Shown here: positions 7,014-53,419 of the stretch, piece by piece
How the letters are laid out: each line of letters begins with the position of its first letter
Position numbering within the stretch: the first letter of the stretch is position 1
Assembly: GCF_001194135.2 (NCBI RefSeq)
Contig: NC_068982.1
Span: 5,405,858-5,469,857, forward strand
Direction of reading: 5' to 3'
DNA: 64,000 nucleotides
From: Octopus bimaculoides
Lineage: Eukaryota
Position numbers and translations under genes: made by a program
The notes under the pieces: generated by a model
What the model was told of the DNA's origin: nothing
Seen by the model: only the letters and a program-made list of their open reading frames with translations
The model's database searches: none

Positions 7014-8110
7014 TTACCTGACACCTTTGCGCATTATCAATTCCTCTCTTGTACTCTCCATCATCACATCAACCACTATTGCAAACAGCAATGGTGATAA
7101 CACAGATCCCTGATGCACACCAACTTTCACCACAAACTCCTCCGACAGCTCCGATCCAATTCTAACCCTTATCATTGGCCCCTCATATAGTGAAGGCAAC
7201 TTCGTCACTGCCCTCACTATTACCCCTATTACACCTCTCTTCCTCAATGCCCATTCAATCACCTTCCTTGGAACCCTATCAAATGCCTTCTCCAGATCAA
7301 CGAAGCACATGTACAATTCCTTCTCCTTATCTTGGTATTCCTCTTGCAATCTCCTTACAATGAACACTGCATCTATTGTCCCCCTTCCTGGTATAAAACC
7401 AAATTGCATCTCATCCACCCCTTTTTGAATTCTCCTCTCCAATACCCTTTCCACTATCTTCATTGCATGCTCCAATAACTTCACTCCCTTATACGCCCTA
7501 CAACTCATTACATTCCCCTTCCCCTTGAAATTCGGTACCACCCCACTTAGTGCCCAATCATCTGGCATTCCCCTTCCATCCAGTACACCCTGGCAAATCT
7601 CCATCATCACAACAATCCCTATCTCTCCATTTGCAGTTATCATTTCCACACTTACTTCTGATGGACCAGCTGCCTTTCCTGTTTTCATTTCCTTCATTGC
7701 CTCCACTACTTCTTCCTGACTAACCCTCTCCACTGGCCCCTACACCACAGCAACTTCCATACTCTGATCCTATTCATTCACCTCGTTCATAATTCCTTCC
7801 ATATGCTCCTTCCAAACTCTTTCCCTGTCCTTCTCGCTAAAATTCAACCTTCCATCACTCTCCCTCAACATCTCTTCCATCTTTTTGCATTAATAAACCT
7901 AAACACTCTGTCTGGGTTCTCATCCAGCCCACTCAACCTCTCCTCAGCCTCCTTCCTCACAGATCTCGCAGCCACCCTCTTTGCACGATTCTTCACATTA
8001 TTATACCTGGCTTTCATTTGCTCAGTCCTATTATTACATAAAGCTTTGTGCGCCTCCGTCTTCCTCACTATCGCATCCCTCACCTCCTCATTCCAACACC
8101 ACATATCTCT
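7014..8110 (-). mobile_element. RTE-clade LINE fragment (linker plus reverse transcriptase N-terminal half)
   Basis: ORF 7014-7733: GKAAGPS, KGKG, QFGFIPGRGTIDAVF, FVDLEKAFDRVPR, GVHQGSVLSPLLF; the upstream part (WCWNEEVRDAI...) is in another frame. Confidence 0.95.
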
Positions 8111-11100: not shown

Positions 11101-12591
11101 TAAGGAACCCACACATTTGATTGTCATGAGGAGAGTATATGACATTTTCATCTCTTCACAAGCAAACCTTGTTTTCGTTTTCAGTACCCCACACACACAC
11201 ATACATATATNNNNNNNNNNNNNNNNNNNNNNNNNNNNNNNNNNNNNNNNNNNNATTATATTAAATATATATTATATATTTATTTATTGTAAGCAAGAAA
11301 AATGATCAATAAAGTTTTGAAGTTGAATGTTTTTTTTTTTACGGATATGTACTTGCATAGCAAGTAACCTGATCTGAGATCATGTGCTGAAACAAAAACA
11401 ATTGCAGCGTGGAAGGTGTTTATAAGCCATTTAGGAAACACACTAAAACTGTTAGATTCACTTCAACATTTAAATCTAATTTGTCAAAATATTTTCATTG
11501 CTTTGAAACCATGGAGCCAGTCAGGGGGCACTGGCATCGACCACGTTCGGATGGTGCATTTTATGTGCCACCAGCACAGGGAGCCAATCAGAGGGCACTG
11601 GCATTGGCTACATTTGGATGCCCTTCCTAACGCCAACCACTTCAAGAGTGTAGTGGGTGTTTTTATGTGCCACAGGTATGGGAGCCAGTCAGGGGGCACT
11701 GACATCGATCACGAGAAGGAAAAACAAATGCCTGGGCACAGGTGAAGCAGTTTGTTTAAAAATCCTGTGGTTCCAGGCTCAGTACTCCTGTACACAACAG
11801 CTTAGCCTTGGACCAACTTAAGCACTATGGAATCAGTCAAAGAGCTTACTTTCATCGGAATGACTTCTGTTGAAAACAATAACTTGAATATAACTGATTT
11901 TGATTGGAGGACTAAGATTCGCCCACTCTCCATATGGCATCTATCCCAGTTTGACTGAAAATCATTTCAGGTGCATGAAGCCAGCAGCTTGCAGATTGCG
12001 TTTTAATGATTATCATGAAATCAACCAAATATGAAACGTTTACCAGTTTTGAAAGTAAGGTCCTCAACTAAGGTGCCCCATAAAATACAAGATAGAAGGT
12101 AACTCAATATTTTCAGCTGAGCTAAAAGTTCTTTGCACACAAAATGAAAAAGGTAGTGTTGTCAGTAGACTGTGGCCATGCAGGGGCACTGCCTTGAAGA
12201 ATTCTTAGTCGAATGAATTGACTCCAGCACTTAGTTTTTTTTAAGCCTGGTACTTATTATATCAATCTGTTTTACTGAACTGCTAAGTTAAGGGGCATAT
12301 AAACACACCAATATCAATTGTCAAGTGGTGGTTGGGGACAGAGAGAGGTGCACACACACACACACACACACACATACAATGGGTTTCTTTCAGCTTCTGT
12401 CTACCAAATCCACTCACAAGTCTTTGGTTGGCCTATGACTATAGTAGAAGACACTCACCAAAAATATCACTCAGTGGGACAGAACTCAGAGCAATGTGGT
12501 TGGGAAGCAAGCTTCTTACCACACAGCCACACCTGGGCCTAATTTGCTAGTAAAAAGGACATTAAAAAACAAGAAAATCAAGTGTACTTAC

Positions 12592-14432: not shown

Positions 14433-14699
14433 TTAAGAAGTTATGAGCGTATATATTATATGAGCTGGTAGAATCATTAGCTTAACGGTATTTCATTAGT
14501 CTTCACATTCAAATTCCACCAAAGTCAATTTTGTCTTTCATACTTTTGGGGATTGATGAAATAAGTACCAGCTGAATACTAAGGTCGAAATTGCTGGCTT
14601 TGTGCCAAAATTTGAAATCAATATATGTGAATTTAATAAAATGCATTTTATTGTAAAACATAACAGTTGATCTTCAGGTCAAACAGTAACTTTTGTTTT

Positions 14700-15141
14700 C
14701 AGAGATGAGGAACTATGTACATTATTTACATTTGACAGATATTTGTCCTCATCTTGTTTGTTGTTAACACAATGTTTCAGCTGATATACCCTCTAGCCTT
14801 CAATCAGGTGTCTTGGGGGAAGGGTCCACAAGGTTCAGTCCTCAGCCCCCTCCTATTTATCATAGTCCTCCAGGCAATAACAGAGGAATTCAAGACAGGA
14901 TGCCCCTGGGAGCTCCTCTATGCTGATGACCTTGCTCTAATTGCTGAGTCACTGCTAGAACTGGAGACAAAGTTTAGGGTATGGAAGCAAGGTCTAGAAT
15001 CGAAGGGCCTTAGAGTCAACCTAGCTAAAACCAAAGTCCTAATAAGTAGGAAGGTAGACAAACCACAAACCCCTTCAGGTAGATGGCCCATTATGTTAAC
15101 AACAAACAAGATGAGGATAAATATCCGTCAAATGTAAATAA
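14700..15141. mobile_element. Inverted H1 tails enclosing an RTE-type reverse transcriptase fragment
   Basis: About 14822-15090 (+) encodes QGSVLSPLLFIIVLQAITEEFKTGCPWELLYADDLALIAES...RVNLAKTKV with no stop; flanked by H1 tails in opposite orientations. Confidence 0.85.
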
Positions 15142-15499: not shown

Positions 15500-15810
15500 A
15501 AATTCATGGCTAAGTGGTGAGGTTGTTTGGCTGATAACTGTAAGGTCATGAGTTCGATTCCCGGCAATGCGCTGTGTCCTTGAGCAAGACACTTCATTTC
15601 GCATTGCTCCAGTTCACTCAGCTGGCAAAAGTGAGTAGTACCTGTAATTCAATGGGCCAGTTTTGTCACATTCAGTGTCATGCTGAATCTCCCCTGAGAA
15701 CTACGTTAAGGATACACATGTCTGTGGAGTACTCAGCCACTTGCACGCTAATTTCACAAGCAGGATGACCCTTTGATTGATCAAATCAAGTGGAACCTGT
15801 ATCGTAACTG
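15500..15810 (+). mobile_element. tRNA-derived SINE with TGTGTCCTTGAGCAAGACACTT core (relatives at about 2470-2750, 4730-5050, 16955-17180)
   Basis: Head with GAGTTCGATTCCCGGC B box; shared 3' part CTCAGCCACTTGCACG...GAACC. Confidence 0.75.
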
Positions 15811-16027
15811 ATGGAGTCCCAGTCACATAATGCAAAAAGAACCAAAATGTAATGATGAGGAATCAATTCAGATTCTTAATCATGCACACACACACGCATA
15901 CACCATCATCATCATTTAGCACCTGCTCTCCAAGCTAGCATGGGTTAGACAGTCTGACTAGAACTGATAATCTGGAGAGCTGCAACCAGGTTCCAGTCCG
16001 ATATATCAGACTGGGTAGGTCTAATGT

Positions 16028-16068
<41 letters not shown>

Positions 16069-16243
16069 NNNNNNNNNNNNNNNNNNNNNNNNNNNNNNNN
16101 NNNNNNNNNNNNNNNNNNNNNNNNNNNNNNNNNNNNNNNNNNNNNNNNNNNNNNNNNNNNNNNNNNNNNNNNNNNNNNNNNNNNNNNNNNNNNNNNNNNN
16201 NNNNNNNNNNNNNNNNNNNNNNNNNNNNNNNNNNNNNNNNNNN

Positions 16244-16275
<32 letters not shown>

Positions 16276-19984: not shown

Positions 19985-20340
19985 ACACAGAATCACATGT
20001 TCACATAACAACATAGAGAGTCACATGTTCATATAACATAGGGAGTCACATGTTCACATAACAGCATAGAGAAGTCGTATTCAGGCAACATAGGGAGTCA
20101 CATATTCACACAACAGAGGGAATCCCCTGTTCACACAACACAGGGAACCTCCTATTCACACAGCATAGGGAATCCCCTGTTCACACAACACAAGGAATCC
20201 CCTGTCTACACAACACAGGGAATCTCCTGTTCACACAACACAGGGAATCTCCTGTTCACACAACACAGGGAATCTCCTGTTCACACAACACAGGGAATCT
20301 CCTGTTCACACAACACAGGGAATCCCCTGTTCACACAAAA
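19985..20340. repeat. 25-bp minisatellite (CAGGGAATCTCCTGTTCACACAACA)n
   Basis: About 14 units, homogeneous at the right end and degenerate at the left. Confidence 0.9.
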
Positions 20341-20418
20341 ACACTTGATATCACACGCAACGAACAATGAACCAGAACTGACAAAAACTAGAGTCTAGAA
20401 AGCAAAGTGGTAACTAAC

Positions 20419-20577
20419 AATTTTCCACGTAAGGGCCTGGTTCCAGAAGCTAGCACCTTCCTCCAAGCTGAAGAGAACACCACCAACGGGGGCACCAAAA
20501 GCAGCAGCTACACCTGCAGCAGCACCTCCTGACACAAAATCTCTCTTCTCAGTATCTGTACGGAAGAATTCAAATAC
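20419..20577 (-). CDS. CLCN7: CLC-7 exon with proton glutamate ([53 protein letters not shown])
   Basis: Near-identical to human [47 protein letters not shown]; 159 nt; ATTTACAG acceptor, GTTAGT donor. With the gating E this implies an antiporter rather than a channel. Confidence 0.98.
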
Positions 20578-21231
20578 CTGTAAATAGAAGAAGAAAAGAC
20601 AACAGGTTAATTAATCAAGGTTTTGTTGTCATCAAGAAAAACATAAAGAGACTTTTGTAATACAAAGCGTCAGAGGAACGACAGAATGTGACGAGAGAAG
20701 CTGAAAATTTGAGAAGTCCCTTATAGTCATTTTCACTTGTAAAATTCTTTACATAAAGCTTTAAGAATCAAAATTAATATTAAAGAAATAACTTCTTTGA
20801 AATAAGTATTATAATAAGGATTTAAAATATAGGGAACAGTGCCAGAAACTTAACAAGTGGGAACACTGAAATCTAACGATGACTTTGTTCTCTTTTTAGG
20901 AATACTTTTCCTGTCATCAGTCCATCATGGCATGAGCTGCATGAACTTGTTGGTGAGTCAGGTCAGCTCTTTTGAAGCTCTCTTTACAGATGGTCATCTT
21001 TAGTAGATAAAAGCTTGAACTTTTATGACGCTTTTGGAGTCTCAGGAGAACAAACTTGAAATTCTGAGAAACCTAAAATCTCCAATCTGATCTGGCAAGG
21101 TTTCTACAGCTAGATGCCTTTCCTAACACTAACCACTCAGAGAGTATAGTGGGTGCTTTTTACATGCCACTGGCATGAGGGCCAGTCAGGCAGTACTGGC
21201 ATCGACCATGGATCCATCTTGGGTTATGGGC

Positions 21232-21917: not shown

Positions 21918-22813
21918 CAAAGTGGTATCAGAAAGTTCTTGGACTAGTTCTGTAGTTCACAGACAGATGGCACCACACAACTGCATGTACTGTGAGAGTT
22001 AGCAGTGACCTTCATGCGGCAGTGTGCCAAGTGACATCACTGTGTTTACTTCACAGGTTGTGAAATTTGTGTTATTTCGTGATCCTGTGTATGCCGTAGT
22101 CTGCTATTTTGTAATGGACAGGAAATTGGAACAAAGAGCTAACGTGAAATTTTGCATCAGATTAGGGAACTACAGAAACATTGAGCATGCTATGGTGATG
22201 AGGCAATGGGTCATATACAAGGTGTCAAGTGGTACAGAGGTTTCAAGAGTGGAAGAACATCCCTGGAAGATGATGAGGCAATCTGGAAGACCTGTCGTGA
22301 GTGAGTGCCACACCTGGAAATGCAGAGAAAATTCATCAGCTTGTGCAGGAGGATCGTCAGAGGACAATCGACAACGTTTTGAAGCATTTGAGGGAGGACA
22401 TTTGGTGCAAGTGACCAGATCTGTGGATCGTGAAGAATCGGGTCCTCCACGATGACAATGCACCCTGACACTGAACGCTCCTCACTCGTGAGTCTCTCAC
22501 CAAAAATAACAGGGTATCCCTTCCACACTCACCCTATTCACCCAATTTAGCATCTGCAGACTTCCATCTCTTCCCCACAATGAAAATGCAGCTCAAAAGG
22601 TTGCCGTTTTAACACCATTGCCGAGATCAGGTGCGAACTGCAGAATGTCCTGGACTTACAGAAAGCGACTTCCAGGCTGGATTCCAAAAATGGCAGGAAC
22701 GCTGGGACCAGTGTATTGTTGTGCAAGGTGGCTATTTTGAAGGAGATGATGTTAAAACGTAAGTTATTTTTTAGTAAACATAAGTAATCCAGGAACTTTT
22801 TGATGCCACTTTA
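21918..22813 (+). mobile_element. Internally deleted mariner transposon
   Basis: About 28-bp TIRs (CAAAGTGGTATCAGAAAGTTCTTGGA vs reverse TAAAGTGGCATCAAAAAGTTCCTGGA), TA flanks, transposase remnants MDRKLEQRANVKFCIRLG, GRTSLEDDE and HPYSPNLASADFHLF. Confidence 0.9.
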
Positions 22814-29285: not shown

Positions 29286-29337
29286 CTGTTTTGTGAGTTA
29301 AGGTGACACAGAAGAAAAGGTAAACAATAAACATTAT

Positions 29338-29444
29338 ACAGTTCTATATTTAAGAGATGAGGAATTATTTGACGGGCATATGGCATTGTGGTTAAGAGCC
29401 CGGGCTACTAACCCCAAGATTCCAAGTTCGATTCCAGGCAGTGA

Positions 29445-29476
<32 letters not shown>

Positions 29477-30090
29477 TCGAAAAATACCTTAGGAATGAGA
29501 ACCCAGGCTCGAAACTTTCCCAAAATACCTGATGAAGGCTGGAGGGTATATCAGCTGAAACACTGTGTTAACAACAGAACCATATTCGATGACTGTCACC
29601 TGTGCCAGTGGAGCACTAACAGCACCATCTGAGCATGATCATTGCCAGAGCAGCTGTCTGGCTTCCATATCAGTGGCACGTAAATAGCACCATTTGAGCG
29701 TGATCGTTACCAAACATCGCCTTACTAGCACTTGTGCCGGTCGCACATTAGAAAACATTCGAGTGAAGTCGTTGTCAGTGCCGCTGGATTGGCTCCTGTG
29801 CAAGTGGCATGTAAAAGAACACCATTTTGAGCGTGGCCATTGCCAGTACCAACTGACTGGCCCTCGTGCCGGTGGCACGTAAAAGCACTCACTACACTCT
29901 TGGAGTGGTTGGTGTTAGGAAGGGCATCCAGCTGTAGAAACTCTGCCAGATCAGATTGGAGCCTGGTGCAGCCATCCGGTTCACCAGTCCTTAGTCAAAT
30001 CATCCAACCCATACTAGCATGGAAAGCGGACGTTAAACGATGATGATGATGAGGACAAATATCCGTTAAATGTAAATAATGTAAATAAAC
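29338..30090 (+). mobile_element. Family H1 SINE copy interrupted by a (GAT)n-tailed SINE
   Basis: Inverted tail 29338-29369, head from 29374, hammerhead core CTGATGA at 29529-29535 with mutated triplet; the tail resumes GATGAGGACAAATATCCG at about 30048. Confidence 0.75.
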
Positions 30091-32062: not shown

Positions 32063-32339
32063 GAGTAAAGGTTGTTTGCCAACATAACATGGCAGTCCTG
32101 GTTTAGGACGAATGTTGTTGTAATTTAGCCCCAGGAGACATGGTCTCCAGCTGGCTATATGACATGAGCTGTGTCCTTATATTTTCGAACAAGGGGGTGC
32201 TATATTTTCTTGTTTGAAAATATAAGGACACAGATCGTGTCGTATAGCCAGCTGGAGACCATGTCTCCTGGGGTTAAATTACAGCAACATTCATCCTAAA
32301 CCAGGACTGCCATGCTATGTTGGTAAACAATCTTTACTC
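32063..32339. repeat. Near-perfect palindrome (foldback); second copy 32826-33153
   Basis: GAGTAAAGGTTGTTTGCCAACATAACATGGCAGTCCTGG... is mirrored by ...CCAGGACTGCCATGCTATGTTGGTAAACAATCTTTACTC; arms about 130 bp. Confidence 0.9.
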
Positions 32340-32471
32340 TGCAGCAGTTTTGTTGGCATAAGTAGTGTTGATAGATCTGTCTTGGAAAACGAGGAGTGCT
32401 GTGAAGAAGTGAGATTTGAAACCAGATTAGCCAGAAGCTGAAAAGAGGATTCACTTCCAGAAGTAACTTAC

Positions 32472-32537
32472 CCATTTTGTTCTGTCAATCAGTTCCTTTT
32501 CATAAATGCTGTTTTCAACCGGGTCATAATCTAAACT
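32472..32537 (-). CDS. CLCN7: CLC-7 exon SLDYDPVENSIYEKELIDRTKW
   Basis: Conserved SLDYD..EN motif, 66 nt, AAG acceptor, TGG|GTAAGT donor. Confidence 0.93.
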
Positions 32538-33394
32538 CTTGAAATTGAAAATAAAAGAAAGAAAATAAAGAAAATTTCGAATCTTTTATGGCATTTAATT
32601 GTTTCTTCTGAGCAGATTTAATCAGTTATTGAAATTAAATATTATGAAAACATTTAGTCAAAAATTCTATTTTCTTAGTTCTAAACACCTTCGTTGTAAG
32701 TAATTCCCACACCCCTAACACTGAACGGATAAAAATAATTTACTGAAATATTATCACAATATAATTCCTTAGAAAATTGCTATTTCTAAATCTCACAATG
32801 AGAGATATTCAGCAACAGTATTTTGGAGTAAAGATTGTTTGCCAACATAACATGGCAGTCCTGGTTTAGGATGAATGTTGCTGTAATTTAGTCACAGGAG
32901 ACATTGTTTCCAACTGGCTATACAACACGATCTGTGTCCTTATATTTTCGAACAAGGGAATGTAGCACCCCCACTCAGCTCAAAACAATATCTGTGTATC
33001 GTGATTTCCGAGTTATTTCCCTTCATCAGCACAGAATAATTGTTTGGCTAGAGGTGGCGCTGCCAAATTCCCTGATCTATAAATTAGAATAAATTACAGC
33101 AACATTTGTCCTGAACCAGGACTGCCATGTTATGTTGGCAAATAATCTTTACTGCAATATAATTCCTGTTCAATGAACTGGACAAAAAGATGAAACAATC
33201 GTCAATGGAGTAATGAACTACTAACTGGCAGGTCAAACAATTCTACACTGTTCGTAGCTGCCAAGAAATAAGTAGCAGATCTTCTGAAAGTACCACTTGC
33301 AAGTAATTAGAGCCATGACTAATATCACATACATCACTAATCTACTTGAGATTAAACGCTGCTTAGTTCCATATAAAACATTGCTATATTATTT

Positions 33395-33760
33395 ACATTA
33401 TTTACATTCGACGGATATTTGTCCTCATCTTGTTTGTTGTTAACACGACGTTTCGGCTGATATACCCTCCAGCCTTCATCAGGTGTCTTGGGGAAATTTC
33501 AAACCTGAATTCTCATTCCTAAGGTACTTTTCGATGTTATTATTATTACTATTATCATTATTCAGGTCACTGCCTGGAATCGAACTCAGAAACTTGGGGT
33601 TAGTAGCCTGCACTCTTAACCACTACGCCATATCCCCATGATGAAGGCAGGAGGGTATATCAGCCGACACATTGTGTTAACAACAAACAAGATGAGGACA
33701 AATATCCGTCAAATGTAAATAATGTACATAATTCCTCATCTCTTAAATATAGAACTGTAA
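33395..33760 (-). mobile_element. tRNA-headed SINE with hammerhead tail plus inverted tail copy (family H1)
   Basis: tRNA-like head (A box TGGCGTAGTGG, B box GAGTTCGATTC), (AAT)n spacer, hammerhead, tail ...GTCCTCATCTTGTTTG; the opposite-orientation tail is at about 33638-33758. Confidence 0.8.
33442..33487 (-). ncRNA. Minimal type I hammerhead ribozyme motif, core intact
   Basis: Minus strand reads GACAC-CUGAUGA-A-GGCUG(GAGGGUAUAU)CAGCC-GAAA-C-GUC/GUGUU. Stem I GACAC:GUGUU, stem II 5 bp, loopless palindromic ACGU stem III, GUC triplet. Confidence 0.75.
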
Positions 33761-34182
33761 AACATTGCTAAGTGCAATAACCATATGATATTTTGTTAAA
33801 TATAAATATATATACACATAAGTGCAAGCATGGTATGTGGTAAGAAGTTTGCTTCCTAACCACATGGGTGGCACCTTGGGCAAGTGTCTTCTACTATAGA
33901 TTCAAGTCAATCAAAGCCTTGTGACAGAAACTGAAAGAAGCTGATCATATATGTGTGTGTATGTGTGAGTGCGTTTGTATTTGTCCCCTACCACGACTTG
34001 ACAACTGGTGTTGGTTTGTTTACATCTATGTATCCGAGCAGTATGGAAAAGAGACTTATGTACCAGACTTTAAAAAAAACAAAAAAACAAGCACTGGGGT
34101 TGATTTGTTTGACTAAAATTCTTCAAGGCATGGTTGCAGTTTAATGATTGAACCAAAAGATTAAAGATAAAAGCAATAATAC

Positions 34183-39870: not shown

Positions 39871-41304
39871 AAATATACCCAAAACAGGCTGCTGAAATTT
39901 CAGCTAATTCTTGGCTATTTTGAATGAAGCCAATGTTCAAATCCAGTTTCTTGAAATGTTTAGAAACTGAAATCGCAAGTAGCCGTCTCAGTCCACGAAG
40001 AACCAAACAGCATTTTGCCTTCTCTCAAAATCTGACTTCTAAACCAAAGTGCATCACACCAAACTTATTGTTCTTCAGAGTATGAGTCAGTGCCATGTAA
40101 TGAAAACAATGTTGCCTGAGTCACTTAATTAGAACCCAATGCACTGTGAAGTGGTTGGCATTAAGAATGGCATCTAGTTATGGAAACCAAGCCAAAACAG
40201 ACAACTGGAGTCTGTGGAACCTGGTGCAGTTCTCTGGTTTGCCAGCTCCTATCAAACCATCCAACACAAACCAGTATGGAAACGGATGTATGATAATGAT
40301 AATGATGATGATTAAGCTCATTAGAGCAAAGTTTGCATATTTTCATCATGAATCCTTTTATTATCTCCATATGTCATTACATTATCAGAGTAATGTGCTA
40401 CTTTTTTCAAGTCCTTAAGTTCTTCCGTGTCATATTAAAAATTACCACTATTTGTCACTCCAATAATTAATCACAAAAATTAGTTTAATTTATTATTTAC
40501 TTCCACAGTTGTAAAATGCTGATCTCGAAGAGGTAAAGTCACTTGATAAGCCAGACAAAGGTCAGTAATAATGAGATGAAGATTTCCATGAATTTGACAG
40601 AGAAAAAAAAATGCTAATGAGTCAGTTGGAAAGTACATCTATTAATAGTAAATACATAGTCAACCGAACAATTTAACAATACCGTGAGGGTTCTAAAGTT
40701 ATAATTATTTCCTCAGCCAGCAATTATTTCAAATTTAATGGACTCATCGTCTTCAAAAGATCAACTCTGAGAGGAATAAAACATGGCTATGGTTTCTATA
40801 GAAATCAATAAGCTGGACTCGGTGAATATTTGAAGTTTTGTAAAATAGATGATTAAGTCCTGAAGTTTATAGTAGATACAAGCATAGAGTAGGGGCTTCA
40901 CTTGTAGATACAACCTAATGCGATTGAAATAGTAATAAGATTCATGAGATGACAGAATCATATTTTCCACAGGCAATAAAAACTTCAGTCACCAGAGAGT
41001 AATTGTTTGTTTCAACGTTTGGAATGTTTTCCTGTTCTTTTAAGCATTTCCATTAACAGATAAATGTGAGTAGGATTTAATGCCAAGTTTTTAGGAGGTC
41101 GTTGTGAGTGAAAGACGATTCATTACCATTGATTGTGTCCATTACAGATCAAAAAATTTTTGCTGAGATGCTTGCTATTACAATTAAGTTTTATATACTT
41201 TTGGAAAATGTCTTTAATCTTACAATTAAGACTTCGTTTATCAACAGTAAGATATTCTTTGTGACAATCTTTGAAATAAGTTTTTGTCAATCTGAACTGA
41301 ATTT

Positions 41305-41567
41305 ACATTATTTACATTTGGCAGATATTTGTCCTTATCTTGTTTGTTGTTAACACGTTTCAGCTGATATACCCTCCAGGTGTCTTGGGGAAATTTTGAA
41401 CCTGGGTTCTCATTCCTAAGGTGTTTTTTGATATTATTATTATTATTCAAGTCACTGCCTGGAATCAAACTCGGAATCTTGGGGTTAGTAGCCCACGCTC
41501 TTAACCACTACGCCATATGCCCGTGTAAATAATGTACATAATTCCTCATCTCTTAAATATAGAACTG
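41305..41567 (-). mobile_element. Family H1 SINE copy with deleted ribozyme core
   Basis: Same head and tail as 33395-33760; CCTTCATCAG is lost between CAG microhomologies; inverted tail at 41524-41567. Confidence 0.8.
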
Positions 41568-42120
41568 AATTGAATTTATCTTAAAAAAGCAACATCTCAG
41601 TCTATTGCTCAATCAATCACTCAATATCTCCCTGCATTATTCAGTGCTCCAAGCTTTGATCAGCATCACTGAGTACTGAGCATCAAAATAACCAACTTAA
41701 AACTTCCTCCTCCTCCTCCTCCTAAATTACTGGCCTTGAGCCAACATTTGAAACCAATATACACATTATTTAAATTTGAGCTTCTATTGGTAGCTAATAG
41801 AAACTCAAATCTAAATACTGTGTGCATGTGTGTGTGTGTGTATTAAATGAGGATATATTTTCACTGTCGGCGTTTTCTGTATGTCGCCTGCTCATTTTTT
41901 TTTCATGTTTCTTTTATAATTCAATTTTTTTTAGTCCGTTAGGATGTGTGGTTTGTGCCTGAGGAATCTGAGTTTTCTCAACATATGAAACTATTAGTAG
42001 CGCTTTAATACATGTATTGTGATCTTCAAATAATATTTATCTCTCACCAGATGGAGTACTGTTTTTGTTGAATTTTCTATCACAGATCAGTACATTTTAT
42101 ATATATACACACACACACAC

Positions 42121-43299: not shown

Positions 43300-43806
43300 A
43301 TATATGGGTACAGGATGTCACACTACGTGAACAACATGAAATCCGAAATATGAAAAACAACATGGAATACGAAGACAATTTTTTTTTTTGCGAACAACGA
43401 GAGAAACAAATGGAAAACAAGACAAACAACATAAAGAGCGACCCTTGTTTACATATTGTGACGTCCTGTACCCATATATGCATATAGTAAAAGCACCCAC
43501 TACACTCTCTGAGTGGTTGGCGTTAGGAAGGGCATCCAGCTGTAAAAACTCTGCCAAATCAGACTGGAGCCTGGTGTTGCCATCCGGTTTCACCAGTCCT
43601 CAGTCAAATCGTCCAACCCATGCTAGCATGGAAAGCGGACGTTAAACGATGATGATGATGATATATATACATATGTCAGTATGTACATATATGTATGTAT
43701 ATATGCCTATACATATATATATTTTATCTATATTATATGATTTAACGCCATGCACCCATTTCCAAGTANNNNNNNNNNACCCATTTCCAAGTAAGTTTAT
43801 CTTATC

Positions 43807-44479: not shown

Positions 44480-46500
44480 TGATGAATGACAATGGCATCA
44501 TCATGACTGGTGACTTCAGTGGATATGTTGGCATTATGAAGGATTCTATCGAAGCTATGACTTCCATTTGATAAATGAAGAGAGAACAAGGTTCCTGAAT
44601 TTCCGTGACAGCAATCATCATCATCATCATCATTTAACGTCCGCTTTCCATGCTAGCATGGGTTGGACGACTTGACTGAGGACTGGTGAAACCAGATGGC
44701 AACACCAGGCTCCAATCTAAATTTGGCAGAGTTTCTACAGTTGGATGCCCTTCCTAACACCAACCACTCATGTCTTGACAATTTGCTACACTAACTGCAA
44801 GAAGTCAACCGGATCATCATCGACCAATCAAGTGAACACACAAGCTGGATAGACTTCTCTGCAGGAAATAATGACAGTCAGATCGTTTGCGGATGCTAAG
44901 TTCTTCTTTCTCAGAGAAAGTTACGAATTAGGAATTCTGAAGTAAAAGCTAGACAAACTCAGAAACAAAACAGTTTGAAGAAGGAAGACATGGAAGTTAA
45001 AAAAGCCATTGAACGATCAGAAATTAAGAGAATTTAGTTGAAGCATATCCCAGAAGGGAAGAGAAGATGGAAATATAATAGAGAACAATTAGAAGTTTTC
45101 TTATTTGGGGAATCTCTGTTGTGAGCTATAGACCAGATCTGTGGCTGGGTTAAGGTTATCACCAGATGGAGAGTGACTTGGTGCCAGAGTAGTACTAGAA
45201 ATAGAGCCATGAAAGCCAAGAGATAAAGTATGGAAAGAGTGAAAGAAAGGAAACAGCAGAGAAATACACCAAGTAACTAGATGTATGTAGCATAGAAAGA
45301 AGTAGAAAGTAAGAGGGGCACCAATGCTCTATGGGAAGATGATCCCTCAGAATAGACAGCCGAGTAGTTCAAGAAGGCGTCATACCTAATGACTGGATAA
45401 CTACACAGATATCAAACTATTAAATCAGGTCATGAAAGTAATGGGAAAAAAATATCAGATTAGTGGGAGAAGCAGCCTAGATGAGATGCAGTTTGACCGA
45501 GGGCTAGAGCAAAGTGTAGACAGCAAGGTGAGAGCCAGTAATGAGTACAGCGACAAATTTAGCATGCAGGTAGGAGTTACTCGGGTTCTCAGTTCCGTTC
45601 TACTTACCATGGTTCTCCAGACATTAGAAATTTAAGGCTGGCTGTCTGTGAGAACTCTTAATTTGAGTGATCTTGTTCTTATAGCTAAATCTGTAACAGA
45701 ATTACAAGAAATTTCAGATAAGGCCTCAAGTAAACTTAGCAATGAGTAAAGTAAATAGGAAAGGAGACAGGATTTTGCTTAGTATCAGGGAAACGGCTCT
45801 GCTCCGAGTACATTGAAGGAATGGGTAGAATTTTCATACATTATAAATATGAGAGCATAAGAGGTGTAATGGAACCATAGGCAGACTGACAGAAAAAGTA
45901 GACTCTTGTGACAGATGTACAGAAGTACTAAGCATTAAAAGTACACAGAAAACAGATTGTCTCAGATGTCTGGAATGCTCTCTATCAGTTGAACGTTTCT
46001 GTTACCCCGGTAACATAATTTGCAGTAACCAGAGTAAAAGTAGATTGAAGAAAATCAAGAGTTGTTACTTCTGCTGGCAACAAAAGATTTCCTTACCAGA
46101 GTGGTGCTTGTATACAAACTGCAATGCTGCATGAAGGCCCCAAAATGTACAAGATTTGAGAAGACTAAGAAGAAGAGATGAAAATGTTCCAGTGGAGGGC
46201 AATATTTATGTCCATGAATGATAGAAATGAGTAAAGATAAAAATTGGGTACCAAAGGAATTGGATGGAGTCTGGAAGAGAGAAGATTCAGCTGGTTTGAG
46301 CCTGTGATGCACATGGAGGATAGCACATAGATAAAAGAATGTGCAACGTATTGAAAGTGAATGGAACGCATGGAACTGGAAAATTGATGGAAAATTTGGA
46401 CAAAGTGGTGAAAACCGACCTCAAGATGATACATATCACACTGCATGGCATGAGAGAAGCCCCAATCAGCCATGTAAAATGGGTTTGATCAAACATTAAA
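44480..46500 (+). mobile_element. Decayed RTE-clade LINE (APE endonuclease to RT), interrupted by a SINE at about 44617-44770
   Basis: IIMTGDFSGYVG (APE motif) near 44500; VRASNEYSDKFSMQVGV near 45530 parallels RT domain text; many stops and deletions. Confidence 0.75.
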
Positions 46501-47393
46501 ACGGGCAGTGGTGGAGGCTGGGAAGCATATCCACCCATGACACTTTGTCCCAACTACTTTTATCTCTTTCCAGTTCCACCCAATCATTCTCTCCTTCCTC
46601 TTTTGTAAAATATGAGTAGTCATGTAGCTTCTCTGCAGCAGGAAACTTGTTCCACTTTGGCCCCTTCTCTCATTCATTATCTGCTCATTTCTTTGGCATC
46701 ATGAAAAAAGCACCCAGTATACACTGTAAAGGTGGTTAGCATTAGGAAGAGCACCCATCCATAGAAACTATGCCAGAGCAGTCAGTGGAGCATGATGTGG
46801 CCCTTGCACCCATAGCATGCTGTCAGACCACACAACCCCCCAAGCCAACAAGGAATATGGATGTTAAATGATATGATGATACATTTAGAACTTGGCTCCC
46901 CAGTTGACTCCACTCCATCATCCTCACTACTCTATTACCCTTTCTTTCATAGTAACCGTTGACAAGGCTCTTTCTCCACCCCCATCTGTTTAATTATCAC
47001 TATCACTCTGCCCGCCCCCACTAACACTGACTTTTGTTACTTCCTCCACTACCACCCCCTTAAACAATAAAGCTCTTCCTCTCATCACATTTAATTTCTC
47101 TTACCTAAAGGCATGCCTGTCTCTCCTGTAGGGACTCCTTAAGTCTAGTAAATTACAAGGGGACCTCACTAATGCTACCAGAGAGAATGCAGGACTGAAA
47201 GGGCTCTTAGAACTTGCCAAAAGCAAGACAACTTCTATAATGGTGCTGCCATGAAACAATACACCCAGCACACACTGTAAAGTGGTTGGTATTAGGAAGG
47301 TTAGAAACTATGCCAAAACTGACACATCAGAACAAGACCTGGGTCTCCAACCTGCCAGACCCTTTGAACTGTCTAATGCCTTTTCTATATTTT

Positions 47394-47740
47394 TGAGATG
47401 AGGAATTCTGTACATTATTTACAATTGACAGAGAGGTGTCCTCATTTTCTTTGTTGTAACCACAATGTTCCTCTGTGGTACTCTCCAGCCTTCATCAGGT
47501 GGAGCATGGGCTACTAACCCTCAGATTCTAAGTTCAATTCTGAGCTGGGACTTGAAAAATAATAACAGAAAAATAACATCAGCAACATACCTAAGGAATG
47601 AGAACAGTGTACCCTGTTAGTCAAATAAAGGGTTGGGATCGAAATTCCACCAGAACACCTGATGAAGGGTAGAGAATACATCAGCCGAAACGTGATAACA
47701 ATTGAGGTGAGGACACCTCTCCGTCCGTTGTAAATAATGT
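47394..47740 (+). mobile_element. Diverged family H1 SINE copy
   Basis: Inverted tail with CCAGCCTTCATCAGGT, truncated head GGGCTACTAACCC, core CTGATGA 47659-47665 ... CAGCCGAAA 47682-47690. Confidence 0.7.
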
Positions 47741-48126
47741 ATAATGCTTGTCAGTTTGAAAAACCTGACATAAAACAATGATGATGGTATACATGTGTTT
47801 GTGAGTGAATACATGTACATGCAGGAGTAAGCTTCATTACCAGCCACATGGTTCCGGGTTCAGTTACACTGCATAGCACCTAGGACAAGTGTCTTCTACT
47901 ATAGCCTTGGGCCGACCAAAGCCTTGTGAATGGATTTGGTAGATGGAAACTGAAAGAAGCCCATCATATATATGTATGTGTATGTATATATATATATATN
48001 NNNNNNNNNNNNNNNNNNNNNNNNNNNNNNNNNNNNNNNNNNNNNNNNNNNNNNNNNNNNNNNNNNNNNNNNNNNNNNNNNNNNNNNNNNNNNNNNNNNN
48101 NNNNNNNNNNNNNNNNNNNNNNNNNN

Positions 48127-48978: not shown

Positions 48979-49777
48979 GTGTGTAAATATCAATCCTTGT
49001 CTAGGCTGTCATCAATGTTTGTTTTAGAAATGAGATAGAAATTGTTGACGTCAAACAATTTACAGATTAGCGGGAACACACGATAATTTTTTTCCGTCCC
49101 GTGATGTATATTGTTTCCAGAAATAAACCACTCAAACTAGATAGATTAATTAAATAATGAATTGATTATTTAAAAATGCTACTGCGATTGAGGTCACGGG
49201 TAAAATATCCAAGAAGGTTTATCATGAAAGCAAAAGTGTCCCCTAATTCTTTTCTTTTTAATTCGATTTAATATTCCAGGAAAACTAAACTGAATTAANN
49301 NNNNNNNNNNNNNNNNNNNNNNNNNNNNNNNNNNNNNNNNNNNNNNNNNNNNNNNNNNNNNNNNNNNNNNNNNNNNNNNNNNNNNNNNNNNNNNNNNNNN
49401 NNNNNNNNNNNNNNNNNNNNNNNNNNNNNNNNNNNNNNNNNNNNNNTGAAACGAAAGCAAAATGAGAAACCTGCTGCAAAATGAAAATTAAAAATTGTTA
49501 TATTTTAAGTCTTAAAATTTTATAACAGTTTTAATACGATATAAACATCGAAAACAACTTTGACGAGGTTTTAAGTTACATTTAGATTTGAGCTTGTGGT
49601 AAACTTATATAGAACTTGGAAAGTTTTACTGAAACATGCACTTAATGGGAAACATTTATTTTGAGAGGGGACCGCAAAAGTAACCAGTATGCGAATGACA
49701 TCGCCAGTTGGCAGACGGAACTAGAAAGGAGTGTCAGCACAATCCCTGGGTTCTAGAGCAAAGGAGAAAATATAAGC

Positions 49778-50269: not shown

Positions 50270-51600
50270 AACTTGACTATTTAACGAGGTTTTACTTATT
50301 TAATTTACAAGACGGTACAACGTGATTTTGGAACAGAACAGGCGACGTCGTTTTGTTTCCTGAATAATTATTAACAATTGTGAAAATAATGTTAAAAGCC
50401 ATTAATTATTGTTTCAAAGAGAACTTCTGAAAATGTCTTCGATAAGAAATCCTCAAAGGAATTAATTGAAACTTGAAATTGCTATGCAGTTTCATGCAAA
50501 ACTAATTTCTTCGAGCTAACGAAAGGGCTTCTAAGAACATGTTAGAGGTAGTAGCCGAATCTCCCGCAAATTACATCCTGTTATCTCGAAAAAACAAAAC
50601 AAAACGGGAACTCATTGTATAATGCTATATACGCAATGCTCGAGAAGCCGACGAGGTGGTCATGATTCGAATACCTACGATCATAGGTTTAAACAACTCC
50701 TTTCTCTGAGCTGGTATGCATTTATGAACATACCGTCAAATTTCATAATTTTCATATAATAATGAGCTCACTGTAGACGATGCTCAACTATAAAGAAGAC
50801 TACCATTTATTTAACATTGCTGTCCCTGATCAAGCAGAAATATGATGAAAGGCATTTCAGCAGTGACCATCCAGATATATTTAAAACTACACTTTCGTAT
50901 ATTCCTTTACTATAGGCTTTGTTTGGCTGCTATTTCTAGCATACCACACGACCACGTTGTGTGAAGAGGAAAAGAAAACGTAAATATATTTTGGAGCACC
51001 TGTTTCCTTTGGAGCATACCATAGTCATGATCGGTATTTGACCACCGAAGATGCAAGGTGTGATCGTGGTTCCGAAGTTTGTGTAGCTTAGTTTTAAAGT
51101 TATTCAGCCCCATGTCAGTCCTTGTAGCGCAGGCTTGTGGTCTACGCATTCTAATCATTGTCAACCTGTCTTTTCTATAACCTCAGAATCATATTATCCA
51201 ACGTATTGTTATTTGATGTATAATTTGAATGGGACTTCCCTGGTATTTCTAGCTGCCACACACAGGATCTTTCATTAACTGACGTTTTAAGTTGATGTGA
51301 CCGTAAATGAATGCACCAAACAGTATGAATAGTTTAACTGTAACATCGTTTTTTTTTTTTGTTTCTTGAACTTTAGCAGCAAGGGTATTTTTCTTTCAAT
51401 CAACATAAACACAAAGAGATACAAACAAGAAAAGAAACAGGTCTATACAATCAATTATTTTAAACAAAGAATAAGTGAAAATAGTCGGATATGGGTGTAG
51501 CTGGTGGTTTATGTTGAACAAACTCAAAAAGTTTGGAAGCAAATTGAGTAATAAATCTGATTACATAAGACTGAACAGGTACGTGTATGTTTCCACTAAC

Positions 51601-51690
51601 CTCAGGGCCACGGTCACGTCTATCGTCGGTTGAATATCGGCGATGGTATGCTCCAAGTAAAGGGGCAGTTTCTGACCGTCTTCTATTCAT
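51601..51690 (-). CDS. CLCN7: CLC-7 chloride/proton exchanger, first coding exon (MNRRRSETAPLLGAYHRRYSTDDRRDRGPE)
   Basis: ATG at 51690, phase-0 donor GAG|GTTAGT at 51600. ETAPLL is a [DE]XXXL[LI] lysosomal sorting motif like the EAAPLL motif of human ClC-7. A polypyrimidine acceptor (...CAATTTTAG at 51700-51701) lies 9 nt upstream of the ATG. Confidence 0.8.
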
Positions 51691-51699
51691 TTCTTCTCG

Positions 51700-52205: not shown

Positions 52206-53419
52206 AATATTATCATCATCGTTCCTGAACCTTTACGAACGACTGAACGAATAGGTTTCGACTAAAATGTAATTCTGTTCCTGCTTGATTAAAGAACTGG
52301 TGGTAGTAGGGGCGAGGAATTACTTTAATCAGGAGTCGCTCAACAAATAATATAGAATCAACGAAACGAAATAACAATCCGATTTTTAGGAAAACATAGT
52401 GTAGCTTTGTGACAAAGCTTAGTAACGTGCATCTGTAATTAATTACTTTTTCGAACCGATACCAGGAAACAGTTTTGCTTTTACTCATTCACTCTGATGC
52501 GATAAAAGACAAATACAATCTCGACAGTTTGACTTCGGAAGGTAGAACCGAACTAAATGCTACTAAATATTTTAAAAAAGAAATCACTGTTGTTACAAAT
52601 ATTTATTCCAATGCTACCGTTTCTACATCGACCTAAGAACCAAATAAAAGCAAAGTTTTGTTGCTATTTTCAGATCATTCCGGAGAGAATATGTATTTAC
52701 GTCGATGCTTTGGTAATAACCGGATCTTTCAAAGTACAGTAAAAAAAAAAAAAAACCGTCAATTTTGAATAATTTGTTATTTATTTTATTTCACGCAAGT
52801 TTCAAATAGCTTCGAAATTATTTCTGACTATATAGCTTGTTGCCCGACTTGGTTTCAAAACCTTAACACTGTAATTAACTCCTAATTGGAGTGTTGATGA
52901 CAATACAAGGAAGACGTTTGCTCTACTCCACCTCATCCCCTCTTCTCCTCACACATTTTAGCTCTAATCAAAATTATCCCTCCATAAANNNNNNNNNNNN
53001 NNNNNNNNNNNNNNNNNNNNNNNNNNNNNNNNNNNNNNNNNNNNNNNNNNNNNNNNNNNNNNNNNNNNNNNNNNNNNNNNNNNNNNNNNNNNNNNNNNNN
53101 NNNNNNNNNNNNNNNNNNNNNNNNNNNNNNNNNNNNNNTTCACAACAATATCCGATGTCTCTTATACTATCCAGACTTTTTTTTCTTTTAAATGGGAGGC
53201 AAGTTGAAAATTCTCGTCGATCCCCACAGTGACCAGTAATAAAATTGCAGGAAAAAAAAGTTGCAGTAACAAAGTAACAATTTTGGCCAGGAAAAAAGTC
53301 ACAGTTAATTTATGAGATCCAGACATCCCCCCCCCCGCCTCCAGGACAAAAACCCCTGTGACTATTTCCTGTGAATTTATTACCGTAACTTTTTTTTTTT
53401 TACCTGAATTCGATCCCAC

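What the first reader, a model, noticed from the sequence alone, without database searches (positions are those of the whole stretch)
33442..33487. One intact hammerhead lies on the CLCN7 sense strand inside an intron
Seen: GACAC-CUGAUGA-A-GGCUG-loop-CAGCC-GAAA-C-GUC-GUGUU on the minus strand, between the exons at 34183 and 32537; predicted cleavage follows 33447. The six sister motifs are damaged: ACU triplet at 29529, GACA at about 33665, an insertion at about 14800, a deletion at about 41375, GUG at 47659 and a partial copy at about 47480. Established: a loopless palindromic stem III (ACGU) of this kind generally needs a dimeric arrangement to cleave. Inference: monomeric pre-mRNA should be largely spared, while tandem or trans pairing could cut it. 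Decay of the sister copies could be neutral or selected.
Basis: partly seen in the sequence, partly recalled or inferred. Interest (0 to 1): 0.7.

Follow-up and report, generated by a model that had tools for sequence, protein, structure and literature searches.

The report
Transposon-borne minimal hammerhead in CLCN7 intron
The intact hammerhead motif is real and lies on the sense strand of a CLC-7 intron, but it is the standard ribozyme module of a repeated SINE-like retroelement with Penelope-type insertion marks, and its own inverted partner arm should lock it into a long hairpin, so it is most likely inert for the host gene.

Summary
At 33487..33442 (minus) the sequence reads GACAC-CUGAUGA-A-GGCUG-loop-CAGCC-GAAA-C-GUC|GUGUU. 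It is the only match to a minimal-hammerhead descriptor in the window (0 of 300 simulated sequences had any). It lies in the sense strand of the 1645-nt intron between CLC-7-like exons ending at 34183 and starting at 32537.

It is not specific to this gene. It matches the "min-HHR" class of Penelope-like elements (PLEs): an extra nucleotide between A9 and G10.1, a G10.1-C11.1 pair, and a loopless palindromic ACGU helix III. It sits in a ~250-nt SINE-like element with a tRNA-type A/B-box head. All five insertions in the window carry marks that the literature describes as particular to PLEs: an inverted 5'-truncated copy, a 31-nt "tail" at one end only, and 8-13-bp target duplications.

In this copy the inverted arm is 94 nt long and 93.6% complementary to the ribozyme. 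Folding the sense RNA buries the ribozyme in a hairpin (-182 kcal/mol); forming helices I and II costs about 50 kcal/mol. No competent dimer partner exists in the window. Sister decay looks neutral. New member of a known kind; low to moderate interest.

The parts
33442..33487 (-). Intact minimal type I hammerhead. Helix I is GACAC/GUGUU. The core is CUGAUGA with an extra A before G10.1. Helix II is GGCUG(G)/(U)CAGCC. Then GAA, A15.1-C15.2-G16.2-U16.1 with no loop, and C17. Predicted cleavage lies between 33447 and 33446.
   Evidence: features compared with PMC4209133
33387..33638 (-). Full direct copy of the SINE-like element: tRNA-type head, AT-rich (TAA)n stretch, body, hammerhead and 3' tail.
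33576..33630 (-). tRNA-type pol III promoter head. A box TGGCGTAGTGG (33630-33620) and B box GAGTTCGATTCC (33587-33576), with canonical A-to-B spacing of 44 nt. The cloverleaf itself has decayed: no ARAGORN or Rfam tRNA hit.
   Evidence: 5 hits in the window, 0 expected; negative for tRNA models
33389..33446 (-). 3' tail downstream of the cleavage site: AC-rich GUGUUAACAACAAACAAG, then GAUGAGGACAAAUAUCCGUCGAAUGUAAAUAAUGUA(AAUAA). This is the inferred internal start site for reverse transcription.
   Evidence: analogy with PMC11167929
33639..33726 (-). Inverted 5'-truncated copy of the element's 3' end. On the + strand it carries a dead hammerhead, cut off at C3, with GACA and ACAUU. With 6 further bases it forms the 94-nt arm 33639-33732, which is 93.6% complementary to 33388-33481.
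33727..33757 (-). 31-nt 'tail' extension (CAGTTCTATATTTAAGAGATGAGGAATTATG; in hammerhead-sense orientation CATAATTCCTCATCTCTTAAATATAGAACTG). It is present only at the inverted end of each insertion.
   Evidence: PMC8557442, PMC11167929
33758..33770 (.). 5' copy of the target-site duplication, TAGCAATGTTTTA.
33374..33386 (.). 3' copy of the target-site duplication, TAGCAATGTTTTA (13/13 identical).
32538..34182 (-). Host intron of the CLC-7-like gene (GT at 34182, AG at 32539-32538).
29334..30088 (+). Sister insertion: extension, about 3 nt of inverted copy, then a full copy with damaged hammerhead at 29525-29569. An unrelated SINE is nested in its tail (29577-30047). TSD AAACATTATA.
41301..41567 (-). 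Sister insertion: extension, 13-nt inverted copy, then a full copy whose hammerhead lacks CUGAUGAAGG (41384-41352). TSD AAATTCA[A/G]TTCAG.
47383..47744 (+). Older sister insertion: extension, an inverted arm of about 90 nt (dead hammerhead at 47502-47458 on the minus strand), and a 5'-truncated direct copy (47654-47699: GUG, helix II mismatches).
14684..15141 (+). Chimeric sister insertion: extension, inverted arm (dead hammerhead at 14812-14766 on the minus strand), an internal LINE reverse-transcriptase fragment (14817-15089), and the same 3' tail (15090-15141).

Best explanation
The motif is the hammerhead module of a SINE-like non-autonomous retroelement.

Element anatomy, 5' to 3':
- a tRNA-derived pol III promoter head;
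- an AT-rich stretch and a body;
- a Penelope-type minimal hammerhead;
- an AC-rich 3' tail.

Inferred mobilisation. Copies were inserted by the machinery of a Penelope-like element (PLE), which nicks both DNA strands and primes reverse transcription on both. That leaves a full direct copy, an upstream inverted 5'-truncated copy, and a 31-nt 'tail' extension at one end only, all inside one target-site duplication.

Inferred role of the ribozyme. If it has any, it belongs to the element's own RNA. In a transcript that starts at the tRNA-like head, helices I and II are predicted to form. Two such RNAs could then pair through the palindromic ACGU to build a double hammerhead. That would cut 53 nt upstream of the inferred internal RT start site and 84 nt upstream of the end of the extension.

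In the CLC-7 pre-mRNA the copy at 33442-33487 is a passenger and is neutralised twice:
- It cannot close helix III as a monomer (established for this class).
- The inverted arm, transcribed about 157 nt earlier, pairs with everything from U4 to the end of the tail in a 94-bp duplex (shown by folding).

Its intactness is best read as survival by chance in one of seven arms. The most plausible effect on the host is the long intronic double-stranded hairpin, not cleavage.
For: Class identity. Every diagnostic trait of the min-HHR listed in PMC4209133 is present: the core, the nucleotide between A9 and G10.1, G10.1-C11.1, palindromic 15.2-16.2 without a loop, a short helix I and a longer helix II.

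Family membership. BLAST of the locus against the window finds five insertions with seven hammerhead-bearing arms.

Head. The A/B-box pattern with tRNA spacing hits all three complete heads; 0 hits are expected by chance. There is no TTTT run between head and tail in the sequence, so a pol III transcript could run through.

Penelope-type marks.
- The inverted 5'-truncated copy varies from about 3 to about 95 nt.
- The same 31-nt extension is found at the inverted end in 5 of 5 insertions. The sequence at the direct ends diverges from it after AATAATGTA.
- Target duplications of 8-13 bp enclose the whole composite.
[quoted passage not shown] PMC11167929 explains it by cleavage and extension of both strands and two adjacent internal RT start sites.
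- The distance from the cut site to the end of the extension (84 nt) resembles the 85-92 nt computed for Poseidon of Anolis from PMC11167929.

Partners probably available. The window shares repeat families with Octopus bimaculoides, and Penelope elements are reported in octopus genomes (PMC8967140, PMC8557442).

Sequestration.
- The sense RNA 33770..33380 folds at -182.3 kcal/mol, z = -19.
- Enforcing helices I and II gives -131.8, a penalty of 50.5 kcal/mol, and their pair probability in context is 0.
- In a head-to-tail transcript without the arm the pair probabilities are 0.84-0.99.

No partner. All six sisters lack a competent core or cleavage site.

Neutral decay. Substitutions relative to the 33k copy are 13% in the HHR against 12.7% in head and body for the 29k copy, and 15% against 26% for the 47k copy. 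Many changes are CpG to TpG or CpA.
Against: - No autonomous Penelope-like element with the same 3' module was found, and none can be searched for with these tools. The mobilising enzyme is therefore inferred from insertion architecture alone.
- Only seven arms are available. They show no compensatory changes in the helices, so family-level conservation of the ribozyme is untested.
- Nearest-neighbour folding ignores proteins, helicases, co-transcriptional kinetics and RNA editing, any of which could open the hairpin.
- The 33k copy keeps all five CpGs of the hammerhead and tail while losing 3 of 6 candidate CpGs in head and body. This is not significant (Fisher p = 0.46 on the strict set), but it does not prove neutrality either.
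- One copy of the tail lies directly behind a LINE reverse-transcriptase fragment. Taken at face value, that would suggest a LINE partner.
Confidence: 0.78

Rival explanations
1. The intact sense-strand hammerhead is a conditional cutter of CLCN7 pre-mRNA: silent as a monomer, active when a second copy pairs with it in tandem or in trans.
For: The core is intact and the ACGU palindrome permits a double hammerhead. Dimeric and trimeric min-HHR constructs do cleave weakly in vitro (PMC4209133). The family is frequent here (five insertions in 64 kb), so transcripts of other copies could exist in the cell.
Against: - In a double hammerhead, cleavage at this C17 needs the partner's core. All six sisters in the window are damaged and none is in tandem.
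- The designed double-hammerhead fold scores -23.3 kcal/mol, against -30.4 for two monomers and -34.4 for the dimer MFE.
- The inverted arm sequesters the motif at a cost of about 50 kcal/mol.
- For a characterised PLE, no RNA-seq reads started or ended at the hammerhead site (PMC11167929).
Confidence: 0.06
2. The element is an ordinary LINE-dependent SINE. Its 3' tail is shared with the LINE whose reverse-transcriptase fragment sits at 14817-15089, and the hammerhead is an incidental insert.
For: At 15090-15141 the tail ATGTTAACAACAAACAAGATGAGGATAAATATCCGTCAAATGTAAATAA directly follows an RVT_1 open frame. tRNA-headed SINEs normally borrow LINE tails.
Against: - Homologues of that reverse transcriptase continue after ...SGRWP into a PHD-type finger (P0121, P0123, P0162, L007). 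The junction is therefore internal to the LINE, and the piece is a chimera or carries a deletion.
- That same insertion also has the inverted arm and the extension.
- The Octopus bimaculoides locus with a related LINE copy holds no trace of the tail.
- The one-sided extension plus inverted 3' end in 5 of 5 insertions is reported as absent from LINE insertions (PMC8557442).
- Twin priming would invert an internal segment, not duplicate the 3' end.
Confidence: 0.12
3. The locus is a DNA-transposon MITE or foldback element with long terminal inverted repeats that happen to contain a hammerhead-like sequence.
For: 94-nt inverted arms flanked by a direct duplication.
Against: - The inner boundary of the left arm varies from about 3 to about 95 nt between copies, while the outer boundary is fixed.
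- The two outer ends are not symmetrical, because of the 31-nt extension on one side.
- Duplication length varies from 8 to 13 bp.
- The internal part has a pol III head.
Confidence: 0.02
4. The hammerhead is irrelevant to the host. The host-relevant feature of this insertion is the 94-bp intronic double-stranded RNA hairpin, a possible substrate for A-to-I editing or small-RNA production.
For: A very stable predicted hairpin in the sense transcript. The window is probably from an octopus, a lineage known from the literature (my own knowledge, not checked here) for extensive A-to-I editing.
Against: There is no expression, editing or small-RNA data. This is a consequence compatible with the best explanation rather than an alternative origin.
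Confidence: 0.15

Closest known systems
Minimal hammerheads (min-HHR) of metazoan Penelope-like elements (Cervera and De la Pena 2014, PMC4209133; Lunse et al. 2017, cited through PMC6765202)
   Same: Type I topology; the CUGAUGA...GAAA core; an unpaired nucleotide between A9 and G10.1; G10.1-C11.1; helix I of 4-5 bp and a longer helix II; palindromic 15.2-16.2 with no loop III, so a dimer is required. Thousands of dispersed, mostly single and often degenerate copies per genome. Pairs 100-700 bp apart on opposite strands are explicitly reported.
   Different: Here the motif is not in the pLTR of an element with an ORF. It lies in a ~250-nt unit headed by a tRNA-type pol III promoter. No autonomous partner is seen.
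Insertion architecture of Penelope-like elements (Craig et al. 2021, PMC8557442; Frangieh et al. 2024, PMC11167929)
   Same: An inverted 5'-truncated copy next to the 5' end; a 30-40-bp tail at one end only (31 nt here); variable target duplications; the hammerhead a few tens of nucleotides upstream of an AC-rich region and two nearby RT start sites.
   Different: No partial tandem or pLTR and no ORF. The similarity is in architecture, not in tested sequence homology.
Sm-alpha / Sj-alpha SINE-like retroposons of schistosomes (Ferbeyre 1998; Laha 2000; summarised in PMC6765202 and PMC8490949)
   Same: A short non-autonomous element that combines a pol III promoter with a type I hammerhead.
   Different: Sm-alpha carries a canonical hammerhead with loop-loop contacts that cleaves efficiently, and it is typically found in tandem arrays. 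Here the ribozyme is the loopless minimal form and the copies are dispersed. Sequence similarity was not tested.
Animal non-LTR retrozymes (Cervera and De la Pena 2020, PMC7229834; Li et al. 2026 preprint, 10.64898/2026.07.22.740005)
   Same: Non-autonomous, hammerhead-bearing and linked to PLEs. Monomeric copies are scattered through genomes; about 43% of copies overlap introns in Xenopus.
   Different: Retrozymes are defined by tandem repeats that yield circular RNAs. No tandem copy occurs in this window, and a tRNA-type head is not part of their description.
[quoted passage not shown]
   Same: A type I hammerhead on the sense strand of an intron.
   Different: Those are single-copy, deeply conserved, have a stable helix III and match Rfam models. 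This one is a repeat copy with no Rfam match and no evidence of conservation.

Membership tests
Hammerhead ribozyme, minimal PLE type (min-HHR) | Catalytic core C3-U4-G5-A6-N7-G8-A9, G12-A13-A14, A15.1-U16.1, and H17 that is not G | tested here: met
   CUGAUGA ... GAA-A-C-G-U-C; descriptor hit with C3 at 33482 and C17 at 33447
Hammerhead ribozyme, minimal PLE type (min-HHR) | Open helix I (type I) of about 4-5 bp and helix II of at least 4 bp closed by G10.1-C11.1 | tested here: met
   Helix I GACAC/GUGUU is 5 bp, one of them G-U. Helix II GGCUGG/UCAGCC is 5-6 bp.
Hammerhead ribozyme, minimal PLE type (min-HHR) | Unpaired nucleotide between A9 and G10.1 | tested here: met
   CUGAUGA-A-GGCUG; the trait is listed in PMC4209133
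Hammerhead ribozyme, minimal PLE type (min-HHR) | Palindromic 15.2-16.2 with no or a tiny loop III, so that a dimer is needed | tested here: met
   A-C-G-U directly followed by C17
Hammerhead ribozyme, minimal PLE type (min-HHR) | Self-cleavage, as a dimer | not testable with these tools
   Needs in vitro transcription. Thermodynamic modelling places the double hammerhead 7 kcal/mol above two monomers, but it ignores tertiary structure.
Hammerhead ribozyme, minimal PLE type (min-HHR) | Family-level support: covariation in the helices among copies | tested here: inconclusive
   Seven arms only. The changes seen break pairs rather than compensate.
Rfam hammerhead families (Hammerhead_1, _3, _II, HH9, HH10) | Match to the covariance model | tested here: not met
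   No hit at gathering score or at E<=10 on 33200-33900
Element mobilised by a Penelope-like element | Inverted 5'-truncated copy adjacent to the 5' end | tested here: met
   5 of 5 insertions; inverted part about 3, 13, 88, about 90 and about 108 nt
Element mobilised by a Penelope-like element | 30-40-bp tail extension at one end only | tested here: met
   A 31-nt extension at the inverted end in 5 of 5 insertions (diverged in the 14k copy). The sequence at the direct ends diverges from it after AATAATGTA.
Element mobilised by a Penelope-like element | Partial tandem (pLTR) arrangement | tested here: not met
   No head-to-tail copies in the window
Element mobilised by a Penelope-like element | 3' module homologous to an autonomous PLE (RT plus GIY-YIG) of the same genome | not testable with these tools
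   No PLE ORF among the window's long open frames. Pattern scans of the metagenome, genome and viral collections were empty.
tRNA-derived SINE | Internal pol III promoter: A and B boxes at tRNA spacing | tested here: met
   TRGCNNAGTGG-N33-RGTTYRANNCC hits 33630-33576, 41515-41461 and 29381-29435; 0 expected
tRNA-derived SINE | Recognisable tRNA cloverleaf | tested here: not met
   ARAGORN finds none. No Rfam tRNA hit at E<=10.
tRNA-derived SINE | 3' tail shared with a partner LINE | tested here: inconclusive
   The only LINE juxtaposition (15089/15090) is inside the LINE ORF, judged from homologues.
MITE / foldback DNA transposon | Symmetrical terminal inverted repeats and a fixed-length target duplication | tested here: not met
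   Asymmetrical ends, variable arm length, and duplications of 8-13 bp

The most novel reading that the evidence does not exclude
The family may be an undescribed kind of SINE: a pol III (tRNA-type) head fused to the 3' recognition module of a Penelope-like element, minimal hammerhead included, and copied by Penelope machinery rather than by a LINE. If so, it offers a natural experiment. All three inverted arms carry the same catalytically dead ACAUU variant yet were reverse transcribed. That would argue that ribozyme catalysis is dispensable for mobilisation, and that each insertion can be built from two different template RNAs.
Probability: 0.3. Interest if true: 0.55.

Novelty: new member of a known kind. 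Interest (0 to 1): 0.3.

Why it matters
For CLCN7 it probably does not matter. The ribozyme is a passenger, disabled by its own architecture and by its inverted partner.

The value is in the classification. An 'intact intronic ribozyme' that looks striking on its own turns out to be one copy of a retroelement family. The same insertion also supplies the antisense strand that silences it.

For transposon biology the family is a compact example of Penelope-type insertion marks on a SINE-sized, pol III-headed element. A genome-wide census could test two open points: whether Penelope-like elements have SINE-style parasites, and whether their hammerheads need to be catalytically competent.

Tried and rejected
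- Rfam at gathering score on the whole window, and at E<=10 on 33200-33900 and 41280-41580: no hammerhead or tRNA family.
- ARAGORN: no tRNA.
- Exact-pattern scans for the hammerhead or the head in the metagenome collection (twice), the prokaryotic genome collection and the viral collection: all empty.
- A protein-word search with the open frame that runs through the element, meant to recover more copies from public assemblies: no hits.
- A CLC exon search, meant to identify the organism. It returned unnamed exon-sized ORFs. The nearest Logan contigs match only the exon, at 82% nucleotide identity.
- Loci fetched through reverse-transcriptase homologues. The Octopus bimaculoides locus shares other repeats with the window but holds no copy of this element. 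Three ENA loci share nothing with the window, and a short NCBI contig shares only the RT fragment.
- My first shuffle script was killed by the sandbox. It was replaced by Markov simulations.
- A concatenated six-frame search to map all exons was prepared but never submitted, because the locus question did not need it.
- Pfam on six other long open frames, including a suspected mariner remnant at 22009-22452: no hits.
- Considered and rejected: a chance motif, a MITE, L1-style twin priming, a LINE partner, and a domesticated intronic ribozyme. Reasons are under Rival explanations and Membership tests.

Full report
**1. The observation**

I wrote a structural descriptor for a minimal hammerhead. 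It requires:
- CUGANGA and an optional extra base;
- helix II of at least 4 bp, then GAAA;
- complementary 15.2/16.2, U16.1, and a position 17 that is not G;
- helix I of at least 4 bp.

It finds this site and no other on either strand. C3 is at 33482 and C17 at 33447. None of 300 first-order Markov simulations of the window gave a hit.

The gene context is also right.
- The upstream exon ends ...CTT TAT GAG|gt at 34183.
- The next exon begins ag|AGT TTA GAT TAT GAC at 32537.
- The joined translation aligns with human CLC-7 residues 89-160 at E = 8.5e-11.

The motif therefore lies in a 1645-nt intron, in the sense orientation. Rfam 15 reports no hammerhead at the curated thresholds or at E<=10. 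I attribute this to the absent helix III hairpin, by inference.

**2. What kind of hammerhead it is**

The motif has every trait that Cervera and De la Pena (PMC4209133) list for the minimal hammerheads of metazoan Penelope-like elements (PLEs):
- a short helix I and a longer helix II;
- an unpaired nucleotide between A9 and G10.1;
- the G10.1-C11.1 pair;
- a palindromic 15.2-16.2 pair with no loop III.

That paper reports no detectable cleavage by single motifs and weak cleavage by dimers and trimers. It also notes pairs of such motifs 100-700 bp apart on opposite strands, which is the arrangement seen here.

**3. The element around it**

BLAST of the locus against the window shows a repeat family with five insertions and seven hammerhead-bearing arms. 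A complete unit is about 250 nt and consists of:
- a head with A box TGGCGTAGTGG and B box GAGTTCGATTCC at exact tRNA spacing (the pattern hits all three complete heads, none expected by chance);
- an AT-rich (TAA)n stretch and a body;
- the hammerhead;
- a tail: GUGUUAACAACAAACAAGAUGAGGACAAAUAUCCGUCGAAUGUAAAUAAUGUA.

The tRNA cloverleaf itself has decayed. There is no TTTT run between head and tail, so a pol III transcript could cover the ribozyme.

**4. How the copies were inserted**

Each insertion is bounded by a target duplication:
- 33k copy: TAGCAATGTTTTA, 13/13 identical.
- 29-30k copy: AAACATTATA.
- 41k copy: AAATTCA[A/G]TTCAG.
- 47k copy: about 8 bp.

Inside the duplication the order is always the same:
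- first, a 31-nt sequence (CAGTTCTATATTTAAGAGATGAGGAATTATG);
- then an inverted copy of the element's 3' end, of variable length (about 3, 13, 88, about 90 and about 108 nt);
- then the direct copy, which ends at ...AATAATGTA(AAT).

Read in the orientation of the inverted copy, the 31 nt prolong the tail beyond AATAATGTA. At the direct end the sequence diverges from it after AATAATGTA.

This combination is the published signature of PLE insertions: an inverted 5'-truncated copy, a 30-40-bp 'tail' at one end only, and variable duplications. Craig et al. state that it is not seen with non-LTR elements (PMC8557442). Frangieh et al. (PMC11167929) explain it. The Poseidon protein of Anolis cuts and extends both DNA strands and starts reverse transcription at two neighbouring internal sites, and the tail is the stretch between them. 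In that element the start sites lie 85-92 nt downstream of the hammerhead cut site, in an AC-rich region. Here the end of the extension lies 84 nt downstream of the cut site, after an AC-rich stretch.

I therefore infer that the family is copied by a PLE. No such element is in the window. The window shares several repeat families, at 80-90% identity, with an Octopus bimaculoides locus, and Penelope elements are reported in octopus genomes (PMC8967140, PMC8557442).

**5. The LINE alternative**

At 14817-15089 a reverse-transcriptase fragment (Pfam RVT_1) is followed directly by the same tail. That could suggest a LINE partner. However:
- Homologues of this reverse transcriptase read on after ...SGRWP into a PHD-type finger, so the junction lies inside the LINE ORF.
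- The piece is preceded by the usual extension and inverted arm.

I read it as a chimeric insertion. This weakens the LINE-partner explanation but does not abolish it.

**6. Behaviour in the CLC-7 transcript**

In the 33k insertion the inverted arm (33639-33732) is 93.6% complementary to 33388-33481. That span covers the ribozyme from U4 to the end of the tail.
- The sense RNA 33770..33380 folds into a long hairpin at -182.3 kcal/mol (z = -19).
- Forcing helices I and II with an open core gives -131.8 kcal/mol, a penalty of 50.5 kcal/mol.
- In the full context the pair probabilities of those helices are zero.
- In a transcript running only from head to tail they are 0.84-0.99.

The arm is transcribed before the ribozyme, so there is no moment when the ribozyme exists without its complement.

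In a double hammerhead, cleavage at this C17 would use the partner's core. None of the six sisters has a competent core and none is in tandem. The modelled double hammerhead (-23.3 kcal/mol) is less stable than two monomers (-30.4) or the dimer minimum (-34.4), although such models ignore tertiary contacts.

The proposed trans or tandem activation is unlikely.

**7. Decay of the sisters**

Relative to the 33k copy, substitutions are:

| Copy | Head and body | Hammerhead |
|---|---|---|
| 29k | 12.7% | 13% |
| 41k | 11.6% | 3%, plus a 13-nt deletion |
| 47k | 26% | 15% |

- Most disabling changes are CpG to TpG or CpA (CAGCCG to CAGCTG, ACGTCG to ACATTG or ACACTG) or indels.
- Copies antisense to the gene are 0 of 3 intact; sense copies are 1 of 4 intact.
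- The 33k copy itself has lost 3 of 6 candidate CpGs in head and body. Its intact ribozyme is therefore not explained by extreme youth, and the regional difference is not significant.

The pattern fits neutral decay with one survivor. The sample is small.

One oddity remains. All three inverted arms share ACATTG and GTCA where direct copies have ACG... and other bases. This suggests that the arms may be copied from other template RNAs than the direct copy, possibly ones with a dead ribozyme.

**8. Verdict**

- The feature is real, and known in kind: a Penelope-type minimal hammerhead carried by a SINE-like retroelement that happened to land in a CLC-7 intron in the sense orientation.
- It most likely does nothing to the host transcript by cleavage.
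- The long intronic hairpin is the more plausible source of any host effect; this is speculative.
- The pol III head combined with Penelope-type insertion marks is the most interesting aspect. I found no description of such a SINE in the searchable literature, but absence from that library is weak evidence of novelty.

Noticed in passing
window 14684-15141 (+): Chimeric insertion: 31-nt extension, inverted arm of the hammerhead element, an internal fragment of a LINE reverse transcriptase (14817-15089), then the Penelope-type tail. Homologues of the RT continue into a PHD finger, so the RT/tail junction is not a native 3' end. This suggests template switching during insertion.
   Followed up: partly
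window 29577-30047 (+), and at least 10 other sites (e.g. 3155-3184, 10268-10296, 43623-43652, 44627-44655): A second, much more abundant SINE family ending ...CATGGAAAGCGGACGTTAAACGATGATGATGA with a (GAT)n tail. One copy is nested inside the tail of the 29k hammerhead element. The same family is present at 87% identity in an Octopus bimaculoides locus (L003 16103-16469).
   Followed up: partly
window 33666-33676 (+), 47470-47458 (-), 14778-14766 (-): All three inverted arms share the variant ACATTG (and GTCA further on), where the direct copies carry ACG-type sequences. This is hard to explain by independent decay. It hints that the two arms of one insertion come from different template RNAs.
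   Followed up: partly
window 2682-2736 (-) and 15507-15561 (+): Two further tRNA-type A/B-box heads, with sequences different from the hammerhead element's head; presumably other SINE families.
   Followed up: no
window 20086-20338: Tandem array of a 25-nt unit (CAACACAGGGAATCTCCTGTTCACA, about 10 copies, 89% matches), within about 60 nt of the CLC exon-containing open frame 20398-20610.
   Followed up: no
window 7017-7739 (-): A 241-codon open frame of a LINE reverse transcriptase (Pfam RVT_1, E 7.5e-18), cut off within the RT domain. It is a distant relative of the fragment at 14817-15089: 68% identity over a 19-residue conserved RT motif.
   Followed up: partly
window ~5750-6100, 16000-16250, 47950-48100, 49300-49450, 53000-53150, 11200-11250: Runs of N (assembly gaps), most of them flanked by TA/CA-type microsatellites. 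The window comes from a gapped scaffold assembly.
   Followed up: no
window 32299-32484, 32777-32869, 33087-33242 (-): Three copies of another short repeat (translating as ...KI[IV][CY]QH[NS]MAVLV) within and next to the same intron as the hammerhead element.
   Followed up: no
window 51463-51699 (-): Open frame containing ...SETAPLLG..., which resembles (from my own recollection of the human sequence) the N-terminal region of human CLC-7; a possible first coding exon. If so, the copies at 29k, 33k, 41k and 47k all lie within the same gene. Pfam gave no hit.
   Followed up: partly
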